A DNA stretch of 64,000 nucleotides. It comes from Mytilus trossulus (lineage: Eukaryota). Location of the stretch: NCBI RefSeq assembly GCF_036588685.1, contig NC_086382.1, positions 56,296,001 through 56,360,000 on the forward strand, written 5' to 3'. The translations under genes were made by a program, and so were the position numbers. The notes beneath the pieces were generated by a model. It was not told the origin of the DNA, made no database searches, and saw nothing but the letters and a program-made list of their open reading frames with translations. Shown in pieces: positions 51,901-64,000 of the stretch. Position 1 is the stretch's first letter, and each line of letters opens with the position of its first letter.

Positions 51901-53594
51901 TGCAATTAAAGTCATTAATTTAACTTCCGTTAATTGTCAATATATATAAGGATTGAGTTTTTTCAGTACCTTTTTATAGGAACCCTGCTAATCCCTTAAT
52001 GGTAAAATGAGCTATTTTCAGCACTCAGCATCCATCGTCCGAAATTAAATTGTGTACAAAACCTTCTTTTTAATTACCGGGACAATTGGAATCTACTCAT
52101 CATTGTGTACCCAGTGATCCGGTTTTTCAAATTAACATGGTCGACATGACTTAGAATAGCACATAAGAAAAAAATGCAAGATTTTAATTTTATCTGGAAA
52201 ACATATACATATAATAATATTGATAGAACAAATATGATACTGGCAGATATGTTCCAAATGATGAGCGCTACCTCCTGTATATCTAAATCAAAAATGTCTG
52301 ACGACTTTTTATTGGAGTTATTACCCTAAGGATAGGGTAGAGTAATAAGTAGACTACTAGCAAGTCACAATGTTTGGTAAAATTATGCAATTGCTGAATT
52401 CAAAACCATCAAATCTCCAATAAAAAATCATTTTTTTTTATACATATATTTTCATTTAACTTTCTTTATAAAACAATCATACAGTCACCAACTTCGCTTT
52501 TATTTGAATACCATAACTTAATTGTTGTGTAAACACGTCAAAAACGTTGACTTATTTCGATGTTTTGTCATGTGTTTTTACCTTAAACACCAAGTTGAAT
52601 AATATGCACCCTTAGTCGATTTAGAACTAGATTTTTCATTAGAGAAACATACGACAAAGTCATGTCCTAGTGCATATTAAATTTCATTAACGCAGGTCCT
52701 GCTTATGCATATTATCCCTATTTCAAAACTTAATTTAATGAGCTTACTGGTATGAAAATATTTGTGCTTAATGTGTTGTATGTTTGTACACCTAACTTAC
52801 AAAGAAGTGCTTTAAATTATAATAGGTAAAACTAGTATGATTTCTTTCGCATAGTTGTTTTCGTTTTTGGATTGCTGTCTCGTTAAAAATTACTTCTTTC
52901 ATGAATATATCATTTATTTTTATATTATATGAATTTAACCTCATAATTTTCTTTTTCAATATTTCAACTTTTAGATTTTGAAATTTTCCTTTTCTGTATA
53001 TCTAACTTAAGTTATTATTTTGAAATAAAATGTATAAATTGGAACTGTCAACTGATTATGTGAATAGATGCACCTAGATATATCGTTCCTAAGTAACTAA
53101 ATGTTTAGAGTCAGCACGCACACCGAAGGTTTTATATTTTAAATGATCATTTGTTATCTTTTTTTTCTTGGAATTGACAATATATTTCCTGGTTAGTGGA
53201 AACTCTGGGTTAAACTTTGTGGTCATTGTGGTTTTAACGTCCAAGGAACTGCATACCGCTGCATTGAAGAGTTGTAGCGCTCCCAGTTTTTAATTGAAAA
53301 AAAAACATAATTTCCTCGTGCACCTTTTTCATTTTTTCCAGTTCTGAAATTAATTAAGTACTTTGTATTTATTATATTGTTTTTTGTTTTTGCATATTAT
53401 AATGTAAAAATAAACTATATGTACTCTGCATGATGTCAAGGCATTGAACAAATAATCGTTTTTGTGACGTAACTTTTGTTATTTAACATGGCCTTAACAC
53501 TTAGGAGTAATACATCACTGTATAACGTACAAATAAAAGAACGAATCAAAATCGTTGTTACAAATCGGTAGTAGTTAATTTCCTCGTTTATGCA

Positions 53595-53602
53595 TATATA
53601 AA
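53595..53602 (+). promoter_or_regulatory. TATA box of cystine-knot gene A
   Basis: TATATAAA 67 nt upstream of the ATG; similar spacing in paralog B. Confidence 0.55.
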
Positions 53603-53661
53603 TATCAAAATTTTCTAGTTTAGAAATCAGATTTAATTTTGACTTGATAAAAGAAATTATA

Positions 53662-56600
53662 ATGGTAAGCTTTAATTTAAATCAAATTTTGTTTTACAAA
53701 AACAATACTTATATATTTAGAGAAAACGTATGATCATCTCTTAAGATGTCCTACGTGTATCTTCTTCTCTATGTAATGCACATAATGCAAAGATCGTTAT
53801 GAAAGAAAAATAATTTTGAAAACAAAACTTTTGCAAATGAAAATTTTGAAGAAATTCATTTATTCTTAAATAATCTTAATAAATATAAGAAATTTAAGTT
53901 GAATTTACAAGAACTACACATTTATATATTATTATATTTATTTGTTTTCACTTTTTCATTAATTGTGGTTCGTTAATTTGAAACACGATGTCTTATCATT
54001 TTTATGAAGATACAAAAAAAAATGTTAGAATATATAAGCAATTTAAAAATTAATGCATTTTGATTTTCAAAGCATTTTATTCCTGTGACCTACACTTATT
54101 ATTGTTGCATAGATAAATAAAAAGATGGCTGAAGGTAACCATTTAGTAAAATGTATTTTATTGCTCTCAGGTTCCACTTCAACTTTATATTGCTGTCATA
54201 GCTGTAACGCTTTCTTCTGCTCTCCCTGGTCCAAAAAAGGATAATAAATGGCAGCTCTGTCAGAAATACGACTTGTTGTATAAACAATGTCTACCACCAT
54301 CGGACTGGATTTGTGATAAGAGTCAGATTCCAGAGACCTACGTTTCATTCAACATGTAAGTATACTCTTATCAAAATACAATACTATTGCGATAATTATA
54401 AATATAATGGCAGCACTTCTGAGAAAATAACAAAGGATTGATTTCACAAAATATTTAGTGTTCGGAGATACATGTAGGGTATTTTTGATAATTTTGATAA
54501 GTACTCCAATTACATTTCGATTATTTATGTCGGATCGGTTTTTCTCGATGCAATCGTCGAGGTCAATTCAAAGACCATTAAAACGTCAGTGAGCTGTAAC
54601 AACAAAAAAGACAAAAAATGAAGGTCAAGGATCAGAATTCACAAAATTGCTTAAATTAAGACTCAAACAAGTATCAATTAAAGTTACAATCGCTAGCTTT
54701 TATATTTCATATTTTTTAATGCAGAATATTTTGTAGATGTGTCAAATTATATTCCCGTTTTACACCACATAGATAATCTTACCGCTTTATACAATAAAAA
54801 ATCATAGAAAAAGTCAAAGAATTTCAAATGTGATTGCACCATACTAATTCATGAGATATAATAAATGCATGTGTATTTGTAAACATTTAATTTACATTCA
54901 TCTTTCTCTCTCTTACAGCCGTAAAGCAATGGATCTCTCAGATAGAGGTTTTGTGAATTTCTTAAAACACAGCAGAGAATGCAATGGTGTCTCAAAACAC
55001 GTATTCTCTAAACAAGATAAAATGGAGGATATCAGAGGAGCTGGGTAAATAAATTTAAAATAGAGAATTTGCTTTCCTAACGGTCAAGTAAGCACTGACG
55101 ACTTTATAATGTTATCTTCAAACGGACCGGTCAGAGTGCATATGTGTTTTTGTACAGAGCTATCACCGTTTAGTGTTATGAATTACCTAAACAAATAATC
55201 AACCTATCAACAAAATGTATTGTTTGCAGGCTGGTTGGTTGGTACGAAATAAATACTAACACATCACAAATTAAGTTTAGATATTTTTCTGGGAAATTTT
55301 AAGAAATATGGATGATCGTTTGAATTTTAAATTAGTTGTATATCAATTTAAAACTATTTGGTTTAAATAAAACTGTCAATACTTAAAGGGTCAAATATTT
55401 AAGAGATATAAACAGTGAAGATTGTGGGGTAAAACGTATTACATGATAATTTCAATGATAAATTTATAGTTATGTGTATGTGTTGTGTTGTTGATAACGA
55501 TCAAAGCAAACAAAAGACAAGGCGACATGCTCTCTGATTAAATTGAGAATGAAGATGGGGAATAAGTCAAATAGATCACAACCCAACCAAAGAGCAGACA
55601 ACTCTTTAATCTTCTTTCTTGTTTAATATGATATTAAAAAACAAATTTCACCATCTGTTAAAACCTATCAACACTTACATCTCAATTATTGAAACATCTA
55701 CATTAGATTTATATCAAATTGTCACAATATTTTAATATGTTTTTTACAGAGCGAATGTGGCTAGAGTCCATAAATTTCCTATGTGCAGAGAAGTGAAGAC
55801 GCTTGTTACCCATGTTTATAGACCATTCTATAACGCAATAACTGATGTCAAAACAGGCTCTGAAATTTGTGAAGTTGTTTTAAGCGACAGAGCCCAAATT
55901 GTTTATAAAGTGGAGTGTTTAGGGTAAGTGAAGTTCTTAGACGCAACTATATCATTCTGTTATACAAAAGTAGGACTATGATCCAACAATCAGGTTTAGA
56001 ATATAAGAAATGTTTGTGCTTTGGTTGCATGTGTGATTGGTTGCTGTCTAACGGAGTATAAACCACACCAGATTTTATTCATAAGAAAATAAGACTAAAA
56101 ACCGCTAAACATTTCTGAAATACAATGTAACCAGCCAAAACAAAACTCTTACGATAGAAATAATTTGTTTATCATCTTTATATTTTTGAATTACAAGTGT
56201 TCACACGCAAAACTGTTTTAATTCCCTAACATGGTGTGCCTGTATCATGTTAGTCTGTACGAACTGTTTGTCTATTGTACTTTATTTATACGAGTCGGAT
56301 GGAAATGGTTGGAGCTTAATAATGTACTATCTTATATTTTCGACATTTCACTTAACGTATAAAGTAACGGTTTTTCGCTTCTCATTGTTATTTGTTTTTT
56401 GTCTCATTAGGGTGTACCCTACTTCTGGTTTTATTCATTCCAATTCCAAGCGAATTATAGCTCCTGCTTCACATGAAGTTATTTTGCTTATTTTGTTATT
56501 ATTTATTTTACAGTCATAAGAGAACAACAAAATGTAGATTTCACTATGCACCACAAAAAGATTATTACTGCCGACCAACCAATTACGTCACAAGAACCAT

Positions 56601-56724
56601 GGTTATTTTATGCCCCAGCGACAATGGAATATTAACCTACCACGTTGAGAAGATCCCAACAGCCTGTAGTTGTGTAAAGGTTGGATGTGACGATACATTC
56701 CCCCTCAAAAAACTTCTCCATTAG
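53662..56724 (+). CDS. Gene A: secreted Spaetzle/neurotrophin-like cystine-knot protein, ~232 aa; join(53662-53664, 54171-54355, 54919-55044, 55750-55923, 56514-56724)
   Basis: All introns GT-AG with consistent phases 0,2,2,2; signal peptide MVPLQLYIAVIAVTLSSA; C-terminal C-REV...Q.V...EC...C...C.PTNY..R.M...C...EKIPTACSC; AATAAA at 56840. Confidence 0.8.
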
Positions 56725-58361
56725 TGAAGGAACAGTATTAAGTCACTAACAAGGGCATGTGCAATATATTTCATCCTCATCATTTATGTGTATTGTCTTT
56801 AATGTTTATGTCTACTTACAAACAACAACAATAATATTGAATAAAAAATAGATTTAAAATTTGTACTTCTATTATTGGTTATAAATAACAACGACTAGGT
56901 AATTAGTGTTCTGTAGATTTTTTTTATTGTATGTTTCTAAAATGTGGTCGGTATTTCCTAACATTTACCAATGCAACATGAGTAGCAGGATCTGCCAACG
57001 TTTCTGTAACACCGGAAACCACCTCCGGTTTTTTGTTGGTTTCTTGATGTTCAGTTTATCTATATATTTTCTATGTTGTACTTTGCGTATGATGGTTGTG
57101 TTTCGTCGTGTTCTATTTCATGAAATGGCATAGACAATTTGACAATCATTTCGACTTGTGATATAAGGATAAAAAGATGTAGTATGATTGACAATGAGAT
57201 CAAAATGATATAGAAGTTTACAACTATAGGTCACAGTACGAACTTAAACAACAAATATAATATACAGCAACAAACTAAAACCACTGAATTACAGTCTTAT
57301 GATTTGAGATATAAAAATGAGGGGTTATACGTGTTTACGGGCACCCAACCCTCCCCTACCCTGAAACAGTGTGAAACAACACAATGTATGAGCGATATAC
57401 TATAAAAACTAGTTGAAAATGGCTACAAAGAAAAAGAATACGATACAGGATATTTCTAAATCCCCACAGTAAAAAAGACGCGATGTAAATGAACTAGTGT
57501 GGATTATTTTAGTCACTGAAACATTGATAACGTGTTGTTAAATACTTGATAAGAACAACATGTAATATACTAGGTAACTGTGATCGAAAGAATAGTAACA
57601 TAACTAATCAATCAAATGTATAAAGAAAAAGATAAAATACAAGTAAATGTACTTCTGTCAATTTGTTTTGAATACTGTTTGCATTGTAAATACACCAACA
57701 CATGGAAGTTTCTAACGACCTTGACTGGCTATACTGAGCCCTCAAACGGTTGGAAAATACATTTAAAACATCTTACAGTAACATTTAGAAGTGGCTTTTA
57801 TGTACATCGGTTATTTGACAAATAGGTGGATTTTTATTAACTTATCTAGACTAAGGTTGCCCTTTGTTTATGTGTTGCATATCTGTTTTTTGTTCATTTT
57901 TTTACCTAAATAAGGCCGTTAGTTTTCTCGTTTGAATTGATTTACATTGTCTTATCGGGGCCTTTTATAGCTGACTATGCGGTATGGGCTTTGCTCATTG
58001 TTGATACCGTACGGTGACCTATAGTTGTTAATGTTTGTGTCATTTTGGTCTTTTGTGGATAGTTGTCTCATTGGCAATCATACCACATCTTCTTTTTTAT
58101 AAGTATATATCACGAGTCTGTCGATTAAATACAACTTATCAGACGCTAGTATATAAAATGAGTATACTACAACATGAGACTAAAACAAGAATTTGTTCGA
58201 TTTGACTCAATATAGGATTACGTGCATCGGTTATACGTTAAACGTAATTTTTACGCAAGTAGAAAAATAAGGTTTTACACATGAATTGCTTACAAATCGT
58301 GTGTTCCTTTCTTTCACAATCGCATTTAATGGGTTCGTGTTGTTTAATATTGAGTGATCTA

Positions 58362-58767
58362 CACAGACAATTTTCATTTACATCAATTTCACATGAATTC
58401 AAATTCATGTGAATCTCACGTGAATTTCACCTCAAACGAGCTTATACGTGAAACTCGCGTGAAATCAGTTTATGTGAGTACATGTATCACATGAATCTCA
58501 TGTGAAATTCACATGAACTTCACATGAAAATTACATGAAATTTGTTCACGTGAAATTCAAATGAATTTTTAAAATAAGGTATTCCAAACAACATCTAAAT
58601 TTTTAAATTTAAGTAAAATCATGAAAAATACCAATATTTTTTTTGGAAAAGAAAGTTTCACGTGAGTATCATGTATAATGTCGTTTGAGGTGAATCTCAC
58701 ATGAAATTTTTCACGTGAATTTCATGTGAGATTCATGTGAAATTCACGTGAGCAAATTTTGCCTGTG
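58362..58767. mobile_element. TA-flanked MITE with CAC termini, built from TTCAC(A/G)TGAA repeats
   Basis: ta-cacagacaatttt ... aattttgcctgtg-ta; dense CACATG/CACGTG subterminal arrays. Confidence 0.75.
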
Positions 58768-59223
58768 TATGCAAGGTTCGCCGTTAACTTAGTTTTCTTT
58801 CGTCTAAATTATTTTTGCCTCGGTATTGTGCGAATTTTTTAATTGTAAGATTTTTTGATTGCTTTCTTGAAAACTTATTTTTCTTCCATATTAGGAGTAT
58901 TCCATGTCAGTGAACTATTAAAGAAATGACTGTCCGTAACACACTCGAAGTCTGTTAAAACACTGATATAGACGTGTGAGTTATGGGATGTCACTGTCGT
59001 CCTGTACAGATGTCATTAATTATCATTAGTGTTTTTTTTATGGTGATAAAAATTATCATATGTATATTTAACTTAGCACTTCAAAGATTAAATGACTTTA
59101 ATAGTTTTAATACAAATTTATTTATGAACCAATACCTTAACAATAACATAACAAAATGAAAAAGCACATAGCGAAACTTTGTAAAACATAAATATCACAG
59201 TCAGTTATATTGTCTTCTGATTT

Positions 59224-62200
59224 TCAAAACAAGCCTGGACTTTTTCTTACTATTTGTTTTGGTCTTATTTCTTGGACGTGTACGGGTCCCTGTCTGATAC
59301 CACGATTGTTAAAGGGACCAGCAACTTCTCCTGTTAAACATTTGACTTTAACACAACTACAAGCTGTTGATACTTTTTCTTTGTAATACTGCAATCCAGT
59401 TAATGGGCAGTCAATAAGCATGGTTCTGTACACAAAATTTGTTGGTCTACAAAAATATTGCTTAAACACCCCATAGTCGAATCTACAGTAGTTGTTCTGT
59501 TTTCTCTCATCTCTGAAAAAAATTAAACGTTAACTTTCAATTAAAAAATAATAAAAACAAAACCGTTAAATACTCGGTTTGTTCATGTATCGTTTGCTAT
59601 ATCGTTATAATAAAAATCTTATATTTTAAATTAATGCCAAATTTTCAGGACTGTTTTTTTGTTTTTTGTTGTTGACTTATGTATCATTTAACTTGGATGT
59701 TCATAGGAATATATACACAAGAACTACACAATTATAAATAATAATAATAAAAAAAAATATAATAATAATTAAAAAAAAAAAAAAAACCCAGAACGCCCGA
59801 TAGACATGTCGCCACCAAGTATCATAAATTGCATTGCGAACATTTAAAAAAAAACAACACTTAATTTTTAACCAACAAAAGATTAAAATACTTTAGCTAA
59901 TTCTCAAAATAAAAATAAAATGCCTATAAATACACAATTTAAACAATTCCAGTAACGTGAAATCTTGAATAACAGAAGGGAAAATTGTCAAAAGATTATA
60001 GACCCATACACTAACACCTGTAAGTTGTTTGGCTAGCTTGAAATATATTACACAATTTGTACTTTCAAGCGTTAATGAAAGCAGATGTATTACAGAAATA
60101 AGAGTGACATTACTTTTCTAATTAGGACAAGGATGAAACCCGAATAAGTAAACAGCCCGTCAAACCAACATTCTAAATAATTTGGTAACTTGTAAAGTAG
60201 ATCTGTTAATGATCTCTAGGTATGAAGCCGACAGGTCAGTCAGAACAGAGAGACAACGAAATACCATTATAACTCCGGACTAAACAGAATTATGGAAACT
60301 TAGCAAAGATATTATAAGTTTTGGTATTGAATATTTTTGTAAGTATTTGAATGACCACTGGACGTTAGTTTAGAACCAATCAGCGTATATTTGCCTGGAT
60401 AACTTTGCAATCAAATTGTCCGGTGAAGTTCAGATGGGGATATTTTATATCAGCAATCAAATACGACTAGTATGGCTTAGTTGCTTTTCACGCCTCACGC
60501 TTCACGTTAGATAAATATTATGTAGTTTATATATCAAATGATGAAATACAGTTTATTATCTTACCCGTTGTAACAGTCCGTCCTGTATATTTTCTGTACA
60601 TTTCTATCAGGGCCATTGAGAATAACCTGGCATACCTCAAAGCCTTCCGGTAATCCAGTCAGCTCATGATATACTGTTTTGTTTATATATGCAATCGGTA
60701 CCTTAACTTCACGACAAACTGGTTTCTTTACGTAATCTATTTTTTCCCTGAAATATAAATATATATTTACATTGAAACAATGTATTTATTGCCAACTGAC
60801 TTTGAAAACTACTATTTAGCGATAATATATATATATATATATATATATATAAGTACGTCTGAGTCAGGCGAGGGAAGAACCAAAAATTTGCGAAAGCAAA
60901 TTTACAGATCTAACATTGTTGGGTTGATGTTTAGACGAGTTGTATATATATATATATATGGATACATCTGTTGTAGAGTTGTCACTGACTCAGACGTACT
61001 TATAAATATAATTATTTTCTGTGACTGTATCTTGCATTAGTTTGTAGGATCATTTACTATAGATAATTGAGCTGATCTGTAACAATAACATCTCCATGCC
61101 TTATATATCATGTACTGTAGTACGCCGCTAGATTAAAACTGACGAGGAAATACATCTTGTGGAACTATGCACACACGGCCACCAAAAGCTTTATTTTTGT
61201 GAAGCCTAGGTGGTCGTGTGGTCTAGCGGGACGACTGCAGTGCAGGCGATTTGGTGTCTAGATATCACAGTAGCATGGGTTCGAATCCCTGCCAGGGAAG
61301 AACAAAAAATTTGCGAAAGCAAATTTACAGATCTAACATTGTTGGGTTGATGTTTAGACGAGATGTATATATATATATATATCTATTTTAAAATACATAT
61401 CCGCGTAAATTTATCAAAAATAAAGATAGGAAATTAATTTAATTATCGTTCAACATATTGATTAATTGATGATGTGCGAAATTTGGATTGCAACTGTAAA
61501 ATTGAGGTATATTCGATAAGGTCATGGAGCAGACCACCTACAAACTCCCTTAACAATCTGAGAATAAAAATAATCGCCGTTTTGCATAGTTCCACAAGAT
61601 GTATTTTAGAAAAGAAAATGTAGATACAGTGCCTCTTAAGTAAACTTTGGATGCCTTTTTGTCTTATTTTATTACTGTACGATGCATATTATGTAGTTTG
61701 TATTTAACTTTGTTGACTATGTAAAATTAAAAAAAAAATGAAGTAAATAAATCAAAAATATCTTTAAAAAAGTTGAAATGATAATTACCCATATGGAGCA
61801 GGATCTCCTAAACACTCACTGCATGACTTTATATAGTGGATAAATGATCCGTCACTCTGGGACAATTTCTGTCTCAATCCACGCCTATTACACAGAGAAA
61901 AAAAAAGAAAACAATTAAATTGAATACAACAATAATTATGATTTATATCAATATATGATTAAAAGCATTATGATTAAAATACTGTCTTCAGTTTTAATTA
62001 TAAATTAAAAAAAAAATGCATTGCTTTTTATTTGAAGATGATTGATTTCTCAGTAAAATGTAAAAAATTACCGCGGTGTCTTAAAAATGTAAAAATTACT
62101 GTCGTGTCTTTAAAATAGAAAAAATAATGACGTGTCTTTAAAATGTGAAACTTACGGCGGTGTCTTTAAAATGTAAAACTTATTTGCGTGTCTTTAAAAT

Positions 62201-63201
62201 GTAAAACTTACTTGCGTGTCTTTAAACTGTAAAACTTACTTGCGTGTCGTTAAAATGTAAAACTTAAGGCGGTGACTTTAAAATGTGAAACTTACTGCGG
62301 TGTCTTTAAAATGTAAAACTTACTTGCGTGTCTTTAAAATGTAAAACTTACTTGCGTGTCTTTAAGCTGTAATACTTACTTGCGTGTCGTTAAAATGTAA
62401 AACTTACTGCGTTTTTTTAAACTGTAAAACTTACTTGCGTGTCTTTATTAAAAATGTAAAACTTACTGCGGTGTCTTTAAAATGTAAAAATTACTAACGT
62501 ATGTTTAAAATTTAAAACGTGTTTGCGTGTCTTTGAAATATTATTATACCATAGAAATACACGATATAGAATACATAATATAGCAAAAGAACAAATATAT
62601 AAAAAAATAAAAAAATATGTAAGTTGAAAACTTATTTTTTTGTAAGTCTATTCTATGGTGCATATCTTCGTGTGTATGAAAAGAAAAAAGAAAAACTCAG
62701 AGGAACTACTTACATATCTAGTGGTGAATAACCAGCTGGTTTATCACAGATCCAGCTCCTGTGTGGCAGACACTGGTCATACAAATACTTGTAGTTAGTA
62801 CATACATCCATGGGTACGCCCGACACATAGGCAATGATGGCACAAGTCAGTAGTAGTTTTAACTAAAAAAAATATAATGATTATTTTTTATGCTGACTTT
62901 TTCAGAAAGACATTTTAGATTTGTATGCCAATTGATCCTATTGCGGTTTAAACAGTAAAATTTGTGAAATACATGTACGGTATAAGGTTTGAATTAAGAA
63001 ATGATAATAATAAAAAACAAAAGCACTTTTGAAGAATTAGCACAAAAAGCGTTTTTGAAATAATAAATGTAACAGTTCTACCTAAACAGAGGGATTTATT
63101 ATTTATCAATTATTCAAAACTTTGTAAGATTTGATATTTTAATGGAAAACAATCTTTGAAATAAATGAATTCAAATATAACGAATTTCATTGACTTACCA
63201 T
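59224..63201 (-). CDS. Gene B: paralogous secreted Spaetzle/neurotrophin-like cystine-knot protein, ~239 aa; complement join(63199-63201, 62714-62862, 61789-61884, 60565-60747, 59224-59512)
   Basis: GT-AG introns, phases 0,2,2,2; signal peptide MLKLLLTCAIIAYVSG; LYDQCLP..WICDK, VCREVK, CRPTNFVYRTM and EKVSTACSCVKV are shared with gene A; AATAAA at 59117-59122 (-). Confidence 0.8.
60851..61380 (+). mobile_element. Interspersed repeat containing a tRNA-like (Pol III A/B box) segment, in gene B intron 3
   Basis: GCCTAGGTGGTCGTGTGG...GGGTTCGAATCCC at 61204-61290; its 3' part is duplicated at ~60868-60960; (TA)n boundaries; inverted aagtacgtctgagtcag. Confidence 0.6.
62055..62535. repeat. Minisatellite, ~29-bp unit, ~16 copies, in gene B intron 2
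   Basis: aaaatgtaaaacttacttgcgtgtcttt repeated. Confidence 0.9.
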
Positions 63202-63263
63202 TTTTAGCAGTGGTCACTTTAAGCAAATTTAAGACGTTTTGATATAAATGGTCAAGTGTAGTC

Positions 63264-63271
63264 TTTATATA
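63264..63271 (-). promoter_or_regulatory. TATA box of cystine-knot gene B
   Basis: TATATAAAG on the - strand, 70 nt upstream of the ATG; CCAAT and CRE-like TGACGT further upstream. Confidence 0.55.
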
Positions 63272-64000
63272 GCATAAAGGTTGACAAATGGTGTCTTTCA
63301 TTTGACAATGATGATGAATTAGCTTACGTACATCACGGACAATGGCCATACTGACGTAGGTCCTTAGGTCAAACTATAACATACTGGTCAGCGATTGGTC
63401 AGTATGTATATATCCTTGTCGCCTAGATTTGTGTATATATAGAAACAAGATACTGGTGGTAAGCAGAACCTAGAAGAGACACAAGAAATAAGGTAAACTA
63501 TTCTATTCTACTTCATTTTCGACAAAGGCCAAACATTATAAAGAGTTTCAAAAAAGAGATTTATACGTTTTACTTTATCGCTTCAACTAGGGATTTAATG
63601 CAAAATTGCTTTATCAAATCAGGTTAAATATTGCACAATATAGTTAAGCAAAATAAGCCCTTTAAATTTCTAACCCACGGCTTCAGATTGCCGTCAAATC
63701 AACGTTTCATATATAAATAATGTGTTCATTATTGTTTTTAGATGAAACATAGTCTATTTTTCCTTGCTGTATTACCATGTGTGTTTGGAATATTTGGAAA
63801 GAAATGTGTTGTTGATCCGATAGAAAACAGATGGCCGGACATGGGAAAGATATGTCATGATCCGTTAGAATATAATCAGTAAGTATACATTTTTAAAAAG
63901 TTGTTTATATTGTAAAATGCACGAATTCAAAATTCTACGCAAAAATCTCTAAATCGTTGCAGTTGGATATTGTCTATTCAAATTGCACTATTATTATCAA

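What the first reader, a model, noticed from the sequence alone, without database searches (positions are those of the whole stretch)
53595..63271. Convergent pair of paralogous secreted Spaetzle-like cystine-knot ligands, largely hidden from the ORF track
Seen: two genes face tail-to-tail with the same architecture (TATA ~70 nt upstream, ATG-only first coding exon, intron phases 0,2,2,2). Each encodes a signal peptide, a Cys-containing prodomain (C...LY.QCLP...WICDK...F...K...EC) and a C-terminal domain with 9 conserved Cys ending (P/S)TACSC.KV.C. Knowledge: the C...Q.V...EC...C...C..Y...P..C.C spacing is that of the Spaetzle/NGF cystine knot, which has 6 knot Cys plus a dimerising Cys in Spz. 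Inference: this is a diverged molluscan cytokine/growth-factor family with one extra disulfide and a free Cys for dimerisation. Two linked, diverged paralogs could form a heterodimer, as bursicon or glycoprotein hormones do. They are candidate endogenous ligands for the expanded bivalve Toll-like receptors or for an RTK, whose ligands are poorly known.
Basis: partly seen in the sequence, partly recalled or inferred. Interest (0 to 1): 0.85.

Follow-up and report, generated by a model that had tools for sequence, protein, structure and literature searches.

The report
Mussel cystine-knot ligand-like gene pair
Two real, spliced mussel genes lying tail-to-tail encode secreted cystine-knot proteins of the nerve-growth-factor/Spaetzle type; they belong to an uncharacterised mollusc-only family that is a reasonable but untested candidate for the missing signalling ligands of mollusc immune or growth receptors.

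Summary
Gene A (+, 53662-56724) and gene B (-, 63201-59224) each have five coding exons, an ATG-only first exon, GT..AG introns and phases 0,2,2,2. They encode 232 and 239 aa, 37% identical. My models match Mytilus trossulus RefSeq proteins ('uncharacterized') letter for letter. Three of A's introns are confirmed by spliced contigs from three studies.

The C-terminal 110 residues model as a cystine-knot growth-factor fold. The Cys spacing nearly equals that of this genome's own neurotrophin. No Pfam family is reached: Spaetzle scores at most 20 of 27 bits, in A-types only. So 'cystine-knot, Spaetzle/NGF-like' is supported, but membership of Spaetzle is not shown, and IL-17-like is not excluded by fold.

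The family is also found in caenogastropods, with all nine Cys invariant, and is expanded in a 100-kb Mytilus cluster.

The A/B heterodimer idea gets no support. A is expressed without B. B's conserved partner is a third, knot-defective paralog (C). C lies head-to-head with B over a conserved 0.25-kb bidirectional promoter, in all three copies.

UniRef already names several orthologs 'Spaetzle domain-containing'. First readers of this scan noted similar clusters elsewhere in this genome. Function is untested.

The parts
53595..53602 (+). TATA box of gene A
   Evidence: TATATAAA 67 nt upstream of the ATG. Its function was not tested.
53662..53664 (+). Gene A coding exon 1 (ATG only, then GTAAGC donor)
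   Evidence: Sequence. It supplies the Met of RefSeq protein P0033. The RNA contig of run X10 has 27 unplaced letters before exon 2, which is consistent but not shown.
54171..54355 (+). Gene A exon 2: rest of the signal peptide and the N-terminal Cys region (C31, C41, C49)
   Evidence: The junction 54355>54919 is present in three RNA-like runs.
54919..55044 (+). Gene A exon 3: N-terminal region with C84 and the A-type-only linker carrying a conserved Arg-Gly site
55750..55923 (+). Gene A exon 4: first half of the knot domain (Cys I, an extra Cys, Cys II)
   Evidence: It is the most divergent exon among A-type paralogs, dN/dS 0.5-0.7.
56514..56724 (+). Gene A exon 5: second half of the knot domain (Cys III, IV, an extra Cys, V, VI, a last Cys) and the stop
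   Evidence: dN/dS is 0.17-0.23. RNA contigs run on to about 56826, and an AATAAA lies at 56840.
59224..59512 (-). Gene B exon 5: second half of the knot domain plus a 37-aa tail and the stop
   Evidence: dN/dS is 0.08-0.10 against B copies at 74.5 Mb.
60565..60747 (-). Gene B exon 4: first half of the knot domain
61789..61884 (-). Gene B exon 3
62714..62862 (-). Gene B exon 2: signal peptide and the N-terminal Cys region
63199..63201 (-). Gene B coding exon 1 (ATG only, then GTAAGT donor)
   Evidence: It is conserved in both other B copies.
63264..63271 (-). TATA box of gene B
   Evidence: It is invariant in the three B/C units.
63202..63445 (.). Shared bidirectional promoter of B (-) and gene C (+). 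It holds two TATA boxes 165 bp apart, with TGACGT-like and ATTGG motifs between them.
   Evidence: Against the two units at 74.5 Mb, identity is 84-86% from the B ATG exon to the B TATA (63199-63271) and about 75% between the two TATA boxes. It is about 50% in the adjacent 5'UTR intron of C. Regulatory function is inferred.
63742..63878 (+). Gene C coding exon 1. The rest lies beyond the window (L010 1182-1283, 1592-1768, 2243-2468). C is a third, divergent paralog lacking knot Cys III and VI.
   Evidence: The family HMM gives 24.1 bits against at most 4.8 for 200 shuffles. Phases are 2,2,2, as in A and B.

Best explanation
A and B are two expressed or constrained paralogs of a mollusc-restricted family of secreted proteins. 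Each has a signal peptide and an N-terminal region with four to five conserved Cys. Each has a C-terminal domain of about 110 residues with a three-disulfide cystine knot of the NGF/Spaetzle type, plus three further conserved Cys.

The most likely mode of action is that of the other members of this fold class. The protein is secreted, and in A-types it is possibly trimmed at a conserved Arg-Gly site 13 residues before Cys I. The knot domains pair into a dimer. The dimer acts as an extracellular ligand (cytokine or growth factor) for a cell-surface receptor.

Shown: the gene models, the splicing of A, purifying selection, the fold class, the Cys pattern, the family's range and the cluster structure.

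Inferred: secretion, processing, dimerisation, disulfide pairing, ligand function and the receptor.
For: - Gene models equal RefSeq proteins.
- Spliced contigs in three studies carry A's junctions.
- dN/dS is 0.05-0.23 over the knot exons at dS 0.3-0.7.
- In the AF2 models the knot domain is all-beta, with 10-residue block means of pLDDT 55-83 in A and 51-78 in B.
- All top structural neighbours are cystine-knot growth factors. Foldseek ranks 1-48 are all of this class. In VIA the top 29 rows over residues 110-222 have Z 3.5-6.1.
- Cys spacing is 43/8/11/31/1 in A and 46/11/11/29/1 in B, against 43/6/11/28/1 in this genome's bona fide neurotrophin.
- The only recurrent Pfam hits are Spaetzle (E 0.001-0.06 in 7 of 7 A-types scanned) and DAN.
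- The nearest named ESM-Atlas clusters are NGF/Spaetzle, scores 0.90-0.92, for both A and B.
- All nine Cys are invariant from mussels to caenogastropods.
Against: - No member reaches any Pfam cut-off.
- B-types and gastropod members give no Spaetzle hit.
- Profile searches of PDB sequences found nothing.
- hhalign against the in-genome neurotrophin gave probability 0.1%.
- Structural Z scores of 4-6 are tied among Spaetzle, NGF, IL-17, DAN and coagulogen. Spaetzle itself scores only Z 3.1.
- Model confidence is moderate, and the N-terminal region is unmodelled.
- The N-terminal region carries conserved Cys, unlike what I recall of the Spaetzle and NGF prodomains. B and the gastropod proteins lack the Arg-Gly linker. 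So a 'prodomain that is cut off' is doubtful.
- Apparent very high transcript depth in one run would also fit an abundant effector rather than a cytokine.
- No receptor, processing or dimer data exist.
Confidence: 0.6

Rival explanations
1. They are divergent IL-17-type cytokines. Bivalves have greatly expanded IL-17, which shares the long two-hairpin knot-like fold and the C-terminal C-x-C.
For: IL-17A/F and IL-25 are among the best structural neighbours: Z 6.0 for A, and 5.4-6.2 for B. The segment from the CP motif to the C-x-C resembles what I recall of IL-17A. Some ESM clusters mix IL17 with NGF/Spaetzle. IL-17 is expanded in Mytilus (PMC8353272).
Against: The Pfam IL17 model gives no hit on A, B or any relative. 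The same model finds 37 loci above cut-off elsewhere in this genome and none in this cluster. As I recall, IL-17 lacks the Cys I-IV disulfide. A and B keep all six knot Cys. Many IL-17 rows appear partly because the PDB holds many IL-17A entries.
Confidence: 0.12
2. They are abundant secreted effector or structural proteins built on a cystine-knot scaffold, not receptor ligands. Possible roles are a clottable protein like coagulogen, an antimicrobial, or a mucus, byssus or shell-matrix component.
For: A tandemly expanded, lineage-restricted, Cys-rich secreted family is typical of mussel effectors. Depth over A's exons is very high in run X1 (a poor measure). dN/dS is raised in exons 3-4 among A-type paralogs, 0.5-1.3. 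Coagulogen is a structural neighbour, Z 4.0-5.4, once over 136 residues that include the N-terminal region. Like coagulogen, the protein has Cys on both sides of a linker that ends in Arg-Gly.
Against: B-types are under strong purifying selection (0.05-0.10). The gastropod orthologs look single-copy per species in the search and are highly conserved. That fits a conserved signalling molecule better than an arms-race effector. The coagulogen alignment has 9% identity and includes low-confidence parts of the model.
Confidence: 0.15
3. One reading: A and B are the two subunits of an obligate heterodimer, kept together as a convergent pair.
For: They are adjacent, tail-to-tail, paralogous, and have odd numbers of Cys in the knot domain.
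Against: In two runs with abundant spliced A transcripts, B's last exon has zero depth. Two further B genes at 74.5 Mb have no A-type neighbour. Five further A-type genes have no B neighbour. The unit conserved in three copies is B head-to-head with C. Convergent genes share no promoter.
Confidence: 0.05
4. They belong to another knot subclass: DAN/CTCK-type BMP or Wnt antagonists, or a PTTH/Trunk-like ligand of a Torso-type receptor tyrosine kinase.
For: Sclerostin, gremlin and NBL1 are top structural neighbours, Z 5.1-6.1. There are weak Pfam DAN hits, 13-17 bits. PTTH scores Z 4.3.
Against: The DAN cut-off of 22 bits is not reached. The spacing between Cys II and III is 8-11 residues, not the C-x-G-x-C eight-membered ring of the DAN/CTCK/TGF-beta classes (the ring rule is from my own knowledge). 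There are no Noggin or Sclerostin hits for A or B.
Confidence: 0.08

Closest known systems
Spaetzle (Pfam PF16077; Drosophila Spz C-106, PDB 3E07), the Toll ligand of arthropods
   Same: It is a secreted precursor with a C-terminal cystine-knot domain. It has six knot Cys with a large ring and a terminal C-x-C. The conserved Q...C before Cys II and the motif before Cys V align (Pfam positions 21-95 of 96). It is the highest-identity structural neighbour, 23-25%. UniRef already labels several orthologs 'Spaetzle domain-containing'.
   Different: The match is below the Pfam cut-off (at most 20 of 27 bits) and is seen in A-types only. There are three extra conserved Cys at other positions. The position next to Cys V, which I recall as the dimerising Cys in Spz, is Ala here. 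The N-terminal region has conserved Cys. Only A-types have a candidate Arg cleavage site. Structural Z is only 3.1. No Toll link was tested.
Neurotrophins (Pfam PF00243 NGF), including this genome's own neurotrophin at C10:48,168,479-48,168,790
   Same: The knot Cys spacing is almost identical: 43/6/11/28/1 in the neurotrophin against 43/8/11/31/1 in A. NGF and NT-4 are top structural neighbours, Z 5.6 and Foldseek probability 0.98-0.99. NGF-bearing clusters are nearest in the ESM Atlas.
   Different: There is no significant PF00243 hit, whereas the true neurotrophin scores 83 bits. hhalign probability is 0.1%. The family HMM does not score the neurotrophin among its top hits. There is no polybasic furin site before the knot. 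The gene has five exons rather than one open frame. There are three extra Cys.
IL-17 family (Pfam PF06083)
   Same: The overall two-hairpin knot-like fold, Z about 6. It is also a secreted dimeric cytokine family expanded in mussels (PMC8353272).
   Different: There is no PF06083 hit, whereas 37 true IL-17 loci are found elsewhere in the genome. A and B keep the Cys I-IV pair that I recall IL-17 lacks.
Horseshoe-crab coagulogen (PDB 1AOC)
   Same: It has an NGF/Spaetzle-like knot with additional disulfides and a Cys-bearing N-terminal segment. As I recall, it is cleaved after Arg by a clip-domain protease. Structural Z is 4.0-5.4.
   Different: Identity is 9-14%. There is no sequence-level hit. 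The alignment over the N-terminal part rests on low-confidence model regions. No clotting role was tested.
Paphia undulata 'first mollusc Spatzle homolog' (Yu et al. 2015, Fish Shellfish Immunol 47:712; cited in PMC6915886 and PMC7773633)
   Same: It is a bivalve protein reported as Spaetzle-like and induced by heat-killed bacteria.

Membership tests
Spaetzle (PF16077) | Scores above the curated Pfam gathering cut-off (27 bits) | tested here: not met
   A exon 5 scores 16.4 bits. The best relative, P0014, scores 20.0 bits (E 0.0011). B, B-type orthologs and 10 gastropod members give no hit. A six-frame scan of the genome finds nothing over the cut-off.
Spaetzle (PF16077) | Cystine-knot growth-factor fold of the C-terminal domain | tested here: met
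   AF2 models of A and B give an all-beta domain, with 10-residue block means of pLDDT 55-83 in A and 51-78 in B. All leading Foldseek and VIA neighbours are cystine-knot factors. 3E07 is at Foldseek rank 19 and VIA Z 3.1. Disulfide topology could not be read from the models.
Spaetzle (PF16077) | Six knot Cys with NGF/Spz-type spacing (large ring, terminal C-x-C) | tested here: met
   A 43/8/11/31/1 and B 46/11/11/29/1, against the in-genome neurotrophin 43/6/11/28/1. The Cys are invariant in 28 sequences.
Spaetzle (PF16077) | A seventh Cys adjacent to Cys V that makes the inter-chain disulfide | tested here: inconclusive
   That position is Ala (TACSC) in all members. Three other extra Cys exist, so an odd Cys is available elsewhere. 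The Spz position is from my memory of the 3E07 work, not from a tool.
Spaetzle (PF16077) | Prodomain removed by a serine protease after a specific Arg; the mature dimer binds a Toll receptor | not testable with these tools
   A-types keep [ED]-[IF]-R-G 13 residues before Cys I. B-types and gastropod members lack this linker. There are no biochemical data.
Neurotrophin (PF00243) | Scores above the Pfam cut-off (27 bits) or shows detectable homology to a bona fide neurotrophin | tested here: not met
   There is no hit for A or B. One fragmentary relative scores 12.6 bits. The genome's true neurotrophin scores 83.2 bits. hhalign of the family against it gives probability 0.1%.
IL-17 (PF06083) | Scores above the Pfam cut-off (24 bits) | tested here: not met
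   No hit. In the genome scan, 37 loci pass and none lies in this cluster.
IL-17 (PF06083) | Knot reduced to two disulfides (Cys I and IV replaced) | tested here: not met
   Cys I and Cys IV are invariant in the family. The IL-17 rule is from my own knowledge (Hymowitz et al. 2001, cited in PMC8353272).
DAN / CTCK (PF03045) | Pfam cut-off (22 bits) and an eight-membered ring (C-x-G-x-C) | tested here: not met
   The best score is 16.7 bits. There are 8-11 residues between Cys II and III.

The most novel reading that the evidence does not exclude
B and the neighbouring gene C are co-transcribed from a conserved compact bidirectional promoter. C is a paralog that has lost the Cys III-VI knot disulfide. 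This B/C unit is kept in three copies. The two products may form a heterodimeric cystine-knot ligand, one full-knot subunit and one reduced-knot subunit. The whole mollusc-specific family (A, B, C and the conserved gastropod gene) would then supply the long-sought endogenous protein ligands for the expanded Toll-like or other orphan receptors of molluscs.
Probability: 0.15. Interest if true: 0.75.

Novelty: new member of a known kind. Interest (0 to 1): 0.45.

Why it matters
Bivalves carry very many Toll-like receptors. Whether any of them is activated by an endogenous Spaetzle-type cytokine, as in insects, is open. The literature I could search names only one mollusc Spaetzle homolog (PMC7773633).

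This locus gives a defined candidate family:
- It is expressed and selectively constrained.
- It has a conserved nine-Cys knot domain from mussels to caenogastropods.
- It lies in a 100-kb expansion in Mytilus.
- It contains a recurrent head-to-head B/C unit that suggests co-regulated subunits.

That makes ligand-receptor tests possible. It does not show a function. The Spaetzle-like nature has already been flagged by automatic annotation.

Tried and rejected
- Exon-by-exon Pfam scans gave only sub-threshold Spaetzle and DAN hits.
- phmmer of A exon 5 against 1.84 billion representatives gave only 8 hits.
- Profile searches of PDB sequences with alignments A1 and A3 found nothing meaningful. 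A single-sequence PDB search also found nothing.
- hhalign of the family against this genome's neurotrophin was not significant.
- Six-frame scans of the genome with the Spaetzle HMM found nothing over the cut-off. One 21.8-bit fragment on C8 was not followed.
- Fold searches could not resolve the subfamily; Z values were tied at 4-6.
- I considered that A and B are the genome's neurotrophin or IL-17 genes. I rejected this because true members of both families are found elsewhere with strong scores.
- I considered exon-4 skipping, because of the 174-aa M. edulis model P0001. No such junction was listed among the RNA contigs, so it is probably an annotation artefact.
Synteny in other Mytilus species therefore rests only on neighbouring accession numbers on shared contigs.
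- ARAGORN found no tRNA in the SINE-like insert of B's intron.
- My own joined exon models were used only inside local scripts, for translation and comparison. They were never sent to a search tool. Whole-protein searches used the identical database records P0033 and P0025, which were reached through the exon-5 search.


Full report
**1. Source of the window**

The window is G000:C10:56,296,001-56,360,000 of a 1.30-Gb genome.

**2. Observation**

Reading 53,000-64,000 and splicing in local scripts gives two five-exon genes.

| Gene | Strand | Coding exons | Product |
|---|---|---|---|
| A | + | 53662-53664, 54171-54355, 54919-55044, 55750-55923, 56514-56724 | 232 aa |
| B | - | 63201-63199, 62862-62714, 61884-61789, 60747-60565, 59512-59224 | 239 aa |

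- Every intron is GT..AG. Phases are 0,2,2,2 in both genes.
- The first coding exon is the ATG alone in both.
- A TATATAAA lies 67 nt (A) and 70 nt (B) upstream of the ATG. These two boxes are exactly the finding's end coordinates.
- The products align end to end at 37% identity, E 2e-43.
- A prokaryote-style ORF list shows only the last exons.
- I did not send my joined models to any search tool. A phmmer search with exon 5 by reference, followed by cluster look-ups, returned database proteins. A local comparison showed two of them identical to my models: P0033 (XP_063402116.1, LOC134686378) and P0025 (XP_063404761.1, LOC134688212). Both are 'uncharacterized protein [Mytilus trossulus]'. All whole-protein work used those ids.

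**3. Expression and constraint**

Logan contigs of four runs were laid on 53600-59590.
- Runs X1, X2 and X10 (three studies) carry the junctions 54355>54919, 55044>55750 and 55923>56514, all GT..AG.
- One 737-nt contig in X2 covers exons 2-5 with 0-2 mismatches per exon.
- Run X23 behaves as DNA: depth about 3-5, with contigs crossing exon-intron borders and no junctions.
- A's first intron was not resolved. The X10 contig has 27 unplaced letters before exon 2.
- B's last exon has zero depth in X1 and X2, where A is abundant, and only about 6-11 in X10.
- B's junctions were not tested with reads. Indirect support comes from the RefSeq model and from full-length B-type ORFs (P0002, P0053; 64-65% identical) on contigs of about 920 nt, which must be spliced.

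dN/dS by the Nei-Gojobori method:

| Comparison | Exon | dN/dS |
|---|---|---|
| A vs other A-type copies | 5 | 0.17-0.23 |
| A vs other A-type copies | 4 | 0.49-0.68 |
| A vs other A-type copies | 3 (41 codons) | 1.3 |
| A vs other A-type copies | 2 | 0.37 |
| B vs the two B copies at 74.5 Mb (dS 0.45-0.67) | 4 and 5 | 0.05-0.10 |

Both are real genes under constraint.

**4. What the proteins are**

*Architecture.*
- Each has a hydrophobic N-terminus. No SignalP was available. AF2 gives helices 4-18 (A) and 2-14 (B).
- An N-terminal region follows with conserved Cys: A C31, C41, C49 and C84; B has one more.
- The C-terminal domain has nine conserved Cys.

*Sequence searches.*
- Pfam gives only sub-threshold hits. 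Spaetzle PF16077 scores 14.5-20.0 bits against a cut-off of 27, in all seven A-type proteins scanned. DAN scores 13-17 bits against 22. B-types give nothing.
- Profile searches of PDB sequences found nothing.

*Structure.*
- AF2 with family alignments models the C-terminal 110 residues as long beta hairpins. The 10-residue block means of pLDDT are 55-83 in A and 51-78 in B. The N-terminal part is below 50 in A and mostly low in B.
- Foldseek's listed hits are all cystine-knot factors, E from 0.009 upwards: sclerostin, NT-4/5, NGF, alpha2/beta5, norrin, IL-17A, VEGF and Spaetzle 3E07.
- The Foldseek-independent VIA search puts 29 knot proteins on top over residues 110-222. Scores are SOST Z 6.1, IL-17A 6.0, gremlin 5.7, NGF 5.6, PTTH 4.3, coagulogen 4.0 and Spaetzle 3.1.
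- For B, IL-17 entries score Z 5.4-6.2 and coagulogen 5.4.
- These Z values are tied. The fold class is supported, the subclass is not.

*Evidence that narrows the subclass.*
- Cys spacing. The genome's true neurotrophin scores PF00243 83 bits and lies in one open frame at C10:48.17 Mb. Its spacing is 43/6/11/28/1. A has 43/8/11/31/1 and B 46/11/11/29/1 once the three extra Cys are set aside. The 8-11 residues between Cys II and III exclude the eight-membered C-x-G-x-C ring of the DAN/TGF-beta classes (my own knowledge).
- All six knot Cys are kept, unlike what I recall of IL-17. The IL17 HMM finds 37 loci in this genome, none in this cluster.
- The nearest named ESM-Atlas clusters are NGF/Spaetzle for both A's knot domain and whole B, scores 0.90-0.92 with 180-197 shared features.

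*Evidence against a closer relationship.* hhalign of the family against the neurotrophin is not significant, and the family HMM does not score it.

*Conclusion.* This is a separate family in the NGF/Spaetzle corner of the cystine-knot superfamily. It is not the neurotrophin, not an IL-17, and not demonstrably a Spaetzle.

**5. Range of the family**

- phmmer against 1.84 billion representatives found 8 hits.
- A profile search found Mytilus species (trossulus, edulis, galloprovincialis, coruscus, californianus). It also found proteins of 244-280 aa from Littorina, Batillaria, Nucella, Pomacea and Babylonia. All are 'uncharacterized' or 'hypothetical', with no Pfam hit.
- In the joint alignment all nine knot-domain Cys, a Gln before Cys II and the CP and T.CSC motifs are invariant. 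Gastropods add a tenth Cys.
- No oyster, scallop or clam member was returned, but that search is word-limited.
- UniRef names several Mytilus members 'Spaetzle domain-containing protein'.
- I found no paper on the family. The literature names one mollusc Spaetzle homolog, in Paphia undulata.

**6. Context changes the 'pair' reading**

*Gene C.*
- Immediately beyond B, on the + strand, a third gene starts at 63742 and continues past the window.
- It encodes 213 aa with a signal-type N-terminus. Its phases are 2,2,2.
- Its 5'UTR intron ends right at the ATG.
- The family HMM scores it 24.1 bits over the whole knot domain, against at most 4.8 for 200 shuffles. It lacks Cys III and Cys VI.

*Cluster map* (tblastn over 113 kb plus 30 kb). 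Coordinates are on C10.

| Region | Content |
|---|---|
| 56,350,171 onwards | A (+) |
| next | B (-) |
| next | C (+) |
| up to 56,409,333 | four units of about 13 kb, each a divergent C-like gene (+) facing an A-type gene (-) |
| up to 56,447,345 | more C-like genes and one A-type (+) |
| 74.53-74.55 Mb | two more units of C (-) head-to-head with B (+), with no A-type gene |

*The recurring unit is B with C, not A with B.* Aligning the three B/C intergenic regions gives:
- 84-86% identity from B's ATG exon to its TATA box;
- about 75% between B's TATA and a second TATA at 63434 that serves C;
- about 50% in C's adjacent 5'UTR intron.

With dS about 0.5-0.7, this points to a constrained bidirectional promoter of about 0.25 kb.

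*Consequence.* Together with A being expressed without B, this argues against an obligate A/B heterodimer. It makes B/C the pair worth testing.

**7. Mechanism**

*Shown:* real spliced genes; the knot fold class; the NGF/Spz-like Cys pattern plus three extra Cys; constraint; the family's range; the cluster and promoter structure.

*Inferred:* secretion; dimerisation through the knot domain, as in the members of this fold class I know; possibly an inter-chain disulfide, given the odd Cys count in the domain of A and B; action as an extracellular ligand.

*Processing is uncertain.*
- A-types keep an Arg-Gly site 13 residues before Cys I.
- B-types and gastropod proteins lack that linker.
- The N-terminal region carries conserved Cys, so it may stay attached, as in coagulogen.
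- Gastropod proteins often end in Gly or Gly-Lys, a possible amidation signal (interpretation from my own knowledge).
- The receptor (Toll-like, Trk, IL-17R or Torso-type) is unknown.

**8. Verdict**

This is an uncharacterised but already annotated member of a known kind, the cystine-knot cytokines or growth factors of the NGF/Spaetzle type. It belongs to a mollusc-restricted family. Interest is moderate. It is a concrete candidate for an open question about endogenous ligands of mollusc receptors, but there is no functional evidence and no categorical novelty.

First readers of this scan also noted the adjacent pairs and similar clusters elsewhere in this genome. I tested only the adjacent ones, in part.

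The reads tool allowed a single call, so B and C expression remain untested.

Noticed in passing
window 63742-63878, continuing in L010 1182-2468: Gene C is a third secreted paralog of 213 aa, phases 2,2,2. It lacks knot Cys III and VI. It is head-to-head with B and convergent with the next A-type gene (P0045, L010 7490 to L011 169). Its 5'UTR intron ends directly at the ATG.
   Followed up: partly
G000:C10:56,350,000-56,447,500 and 74,532,900-74,548,600 (L010, L011, L019-L029): There is a cluster of about 100 kb with at least 6 A-type, 1 B-type and at least 9 C/C-like genes. Four units of about 13 kb each hold a C-like gene facing an A-type gene. A second site holds two C/B head-to-head units.
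   Followed up: partly
G000:C10:48,168,479-48,168,790 (L012:1459-2208, minus strand): A canonical neurotrophin gene lies in one 250-aa open frame, PF00243 83 bits, with a polybasic stretch before the knot. It is 8 Mb from the cluster on the same chromosome.
   Followed up: partly
window 57800-58200: A very high-copy repeat lies in the A-B intergenic region. Summed contig depth reaches about 1,000,000 in the DNA-like run, with many rearranged joints.
   Followed up: no
window 58350-58760: A block of short direct and inverted repeats of TCACATGAAAT / TTCACGTGAAA holds many CACGTG/CACATG motifs, arranged as two arms around 58580-58650.
   Followed up: no
window 62054-62539: A minisatellite of 28-bp units, 17 copies at 81% matches, lies in B's intron between coding exons 2 and 3.
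   Followed up: no
window 60850-61360: In B's intron 3, a segment of about 65 bp occurs twice, next to (TA)n runs. The copies flank a GC-rich insert of about 100 bp with a GGTTCGAATCC box, which is SINE-like. ARAGORN calls no tRNA there.
   Followed up: partly
P0058, P0061-P0066, P0069-P0072 (gastropod orthologs): The gastropod members are highly conserved. They have an N-terminal peptide followed by Arg-Arg in many of them, a tenth Cys in the knot domain, and C-termini ending in Gly or Gly-Lys. Those ends look like prohormone-type processing and amidation signals.
   Followed up: no
G000:C8 44.1-58.7 Mb: 37 IL-17 domain loci score above the Pfam cut-off, almost all on one chromosome (C8) in several tandem groups. 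A weak Spaetzle-like fragment lies at C8:60,021,856-60,022,020 (21.8 bits, one TGA inside).
   Followed up: no
P0001 (Mytilus edulis, 174 aa): This database model of an A-type ortholog lacks exon 4, the first half of the knot. No exon-4-skipping junction was listed among the RNA contigs laid on gene A, so it is probably an annotation artefact.
   Followed up: partly
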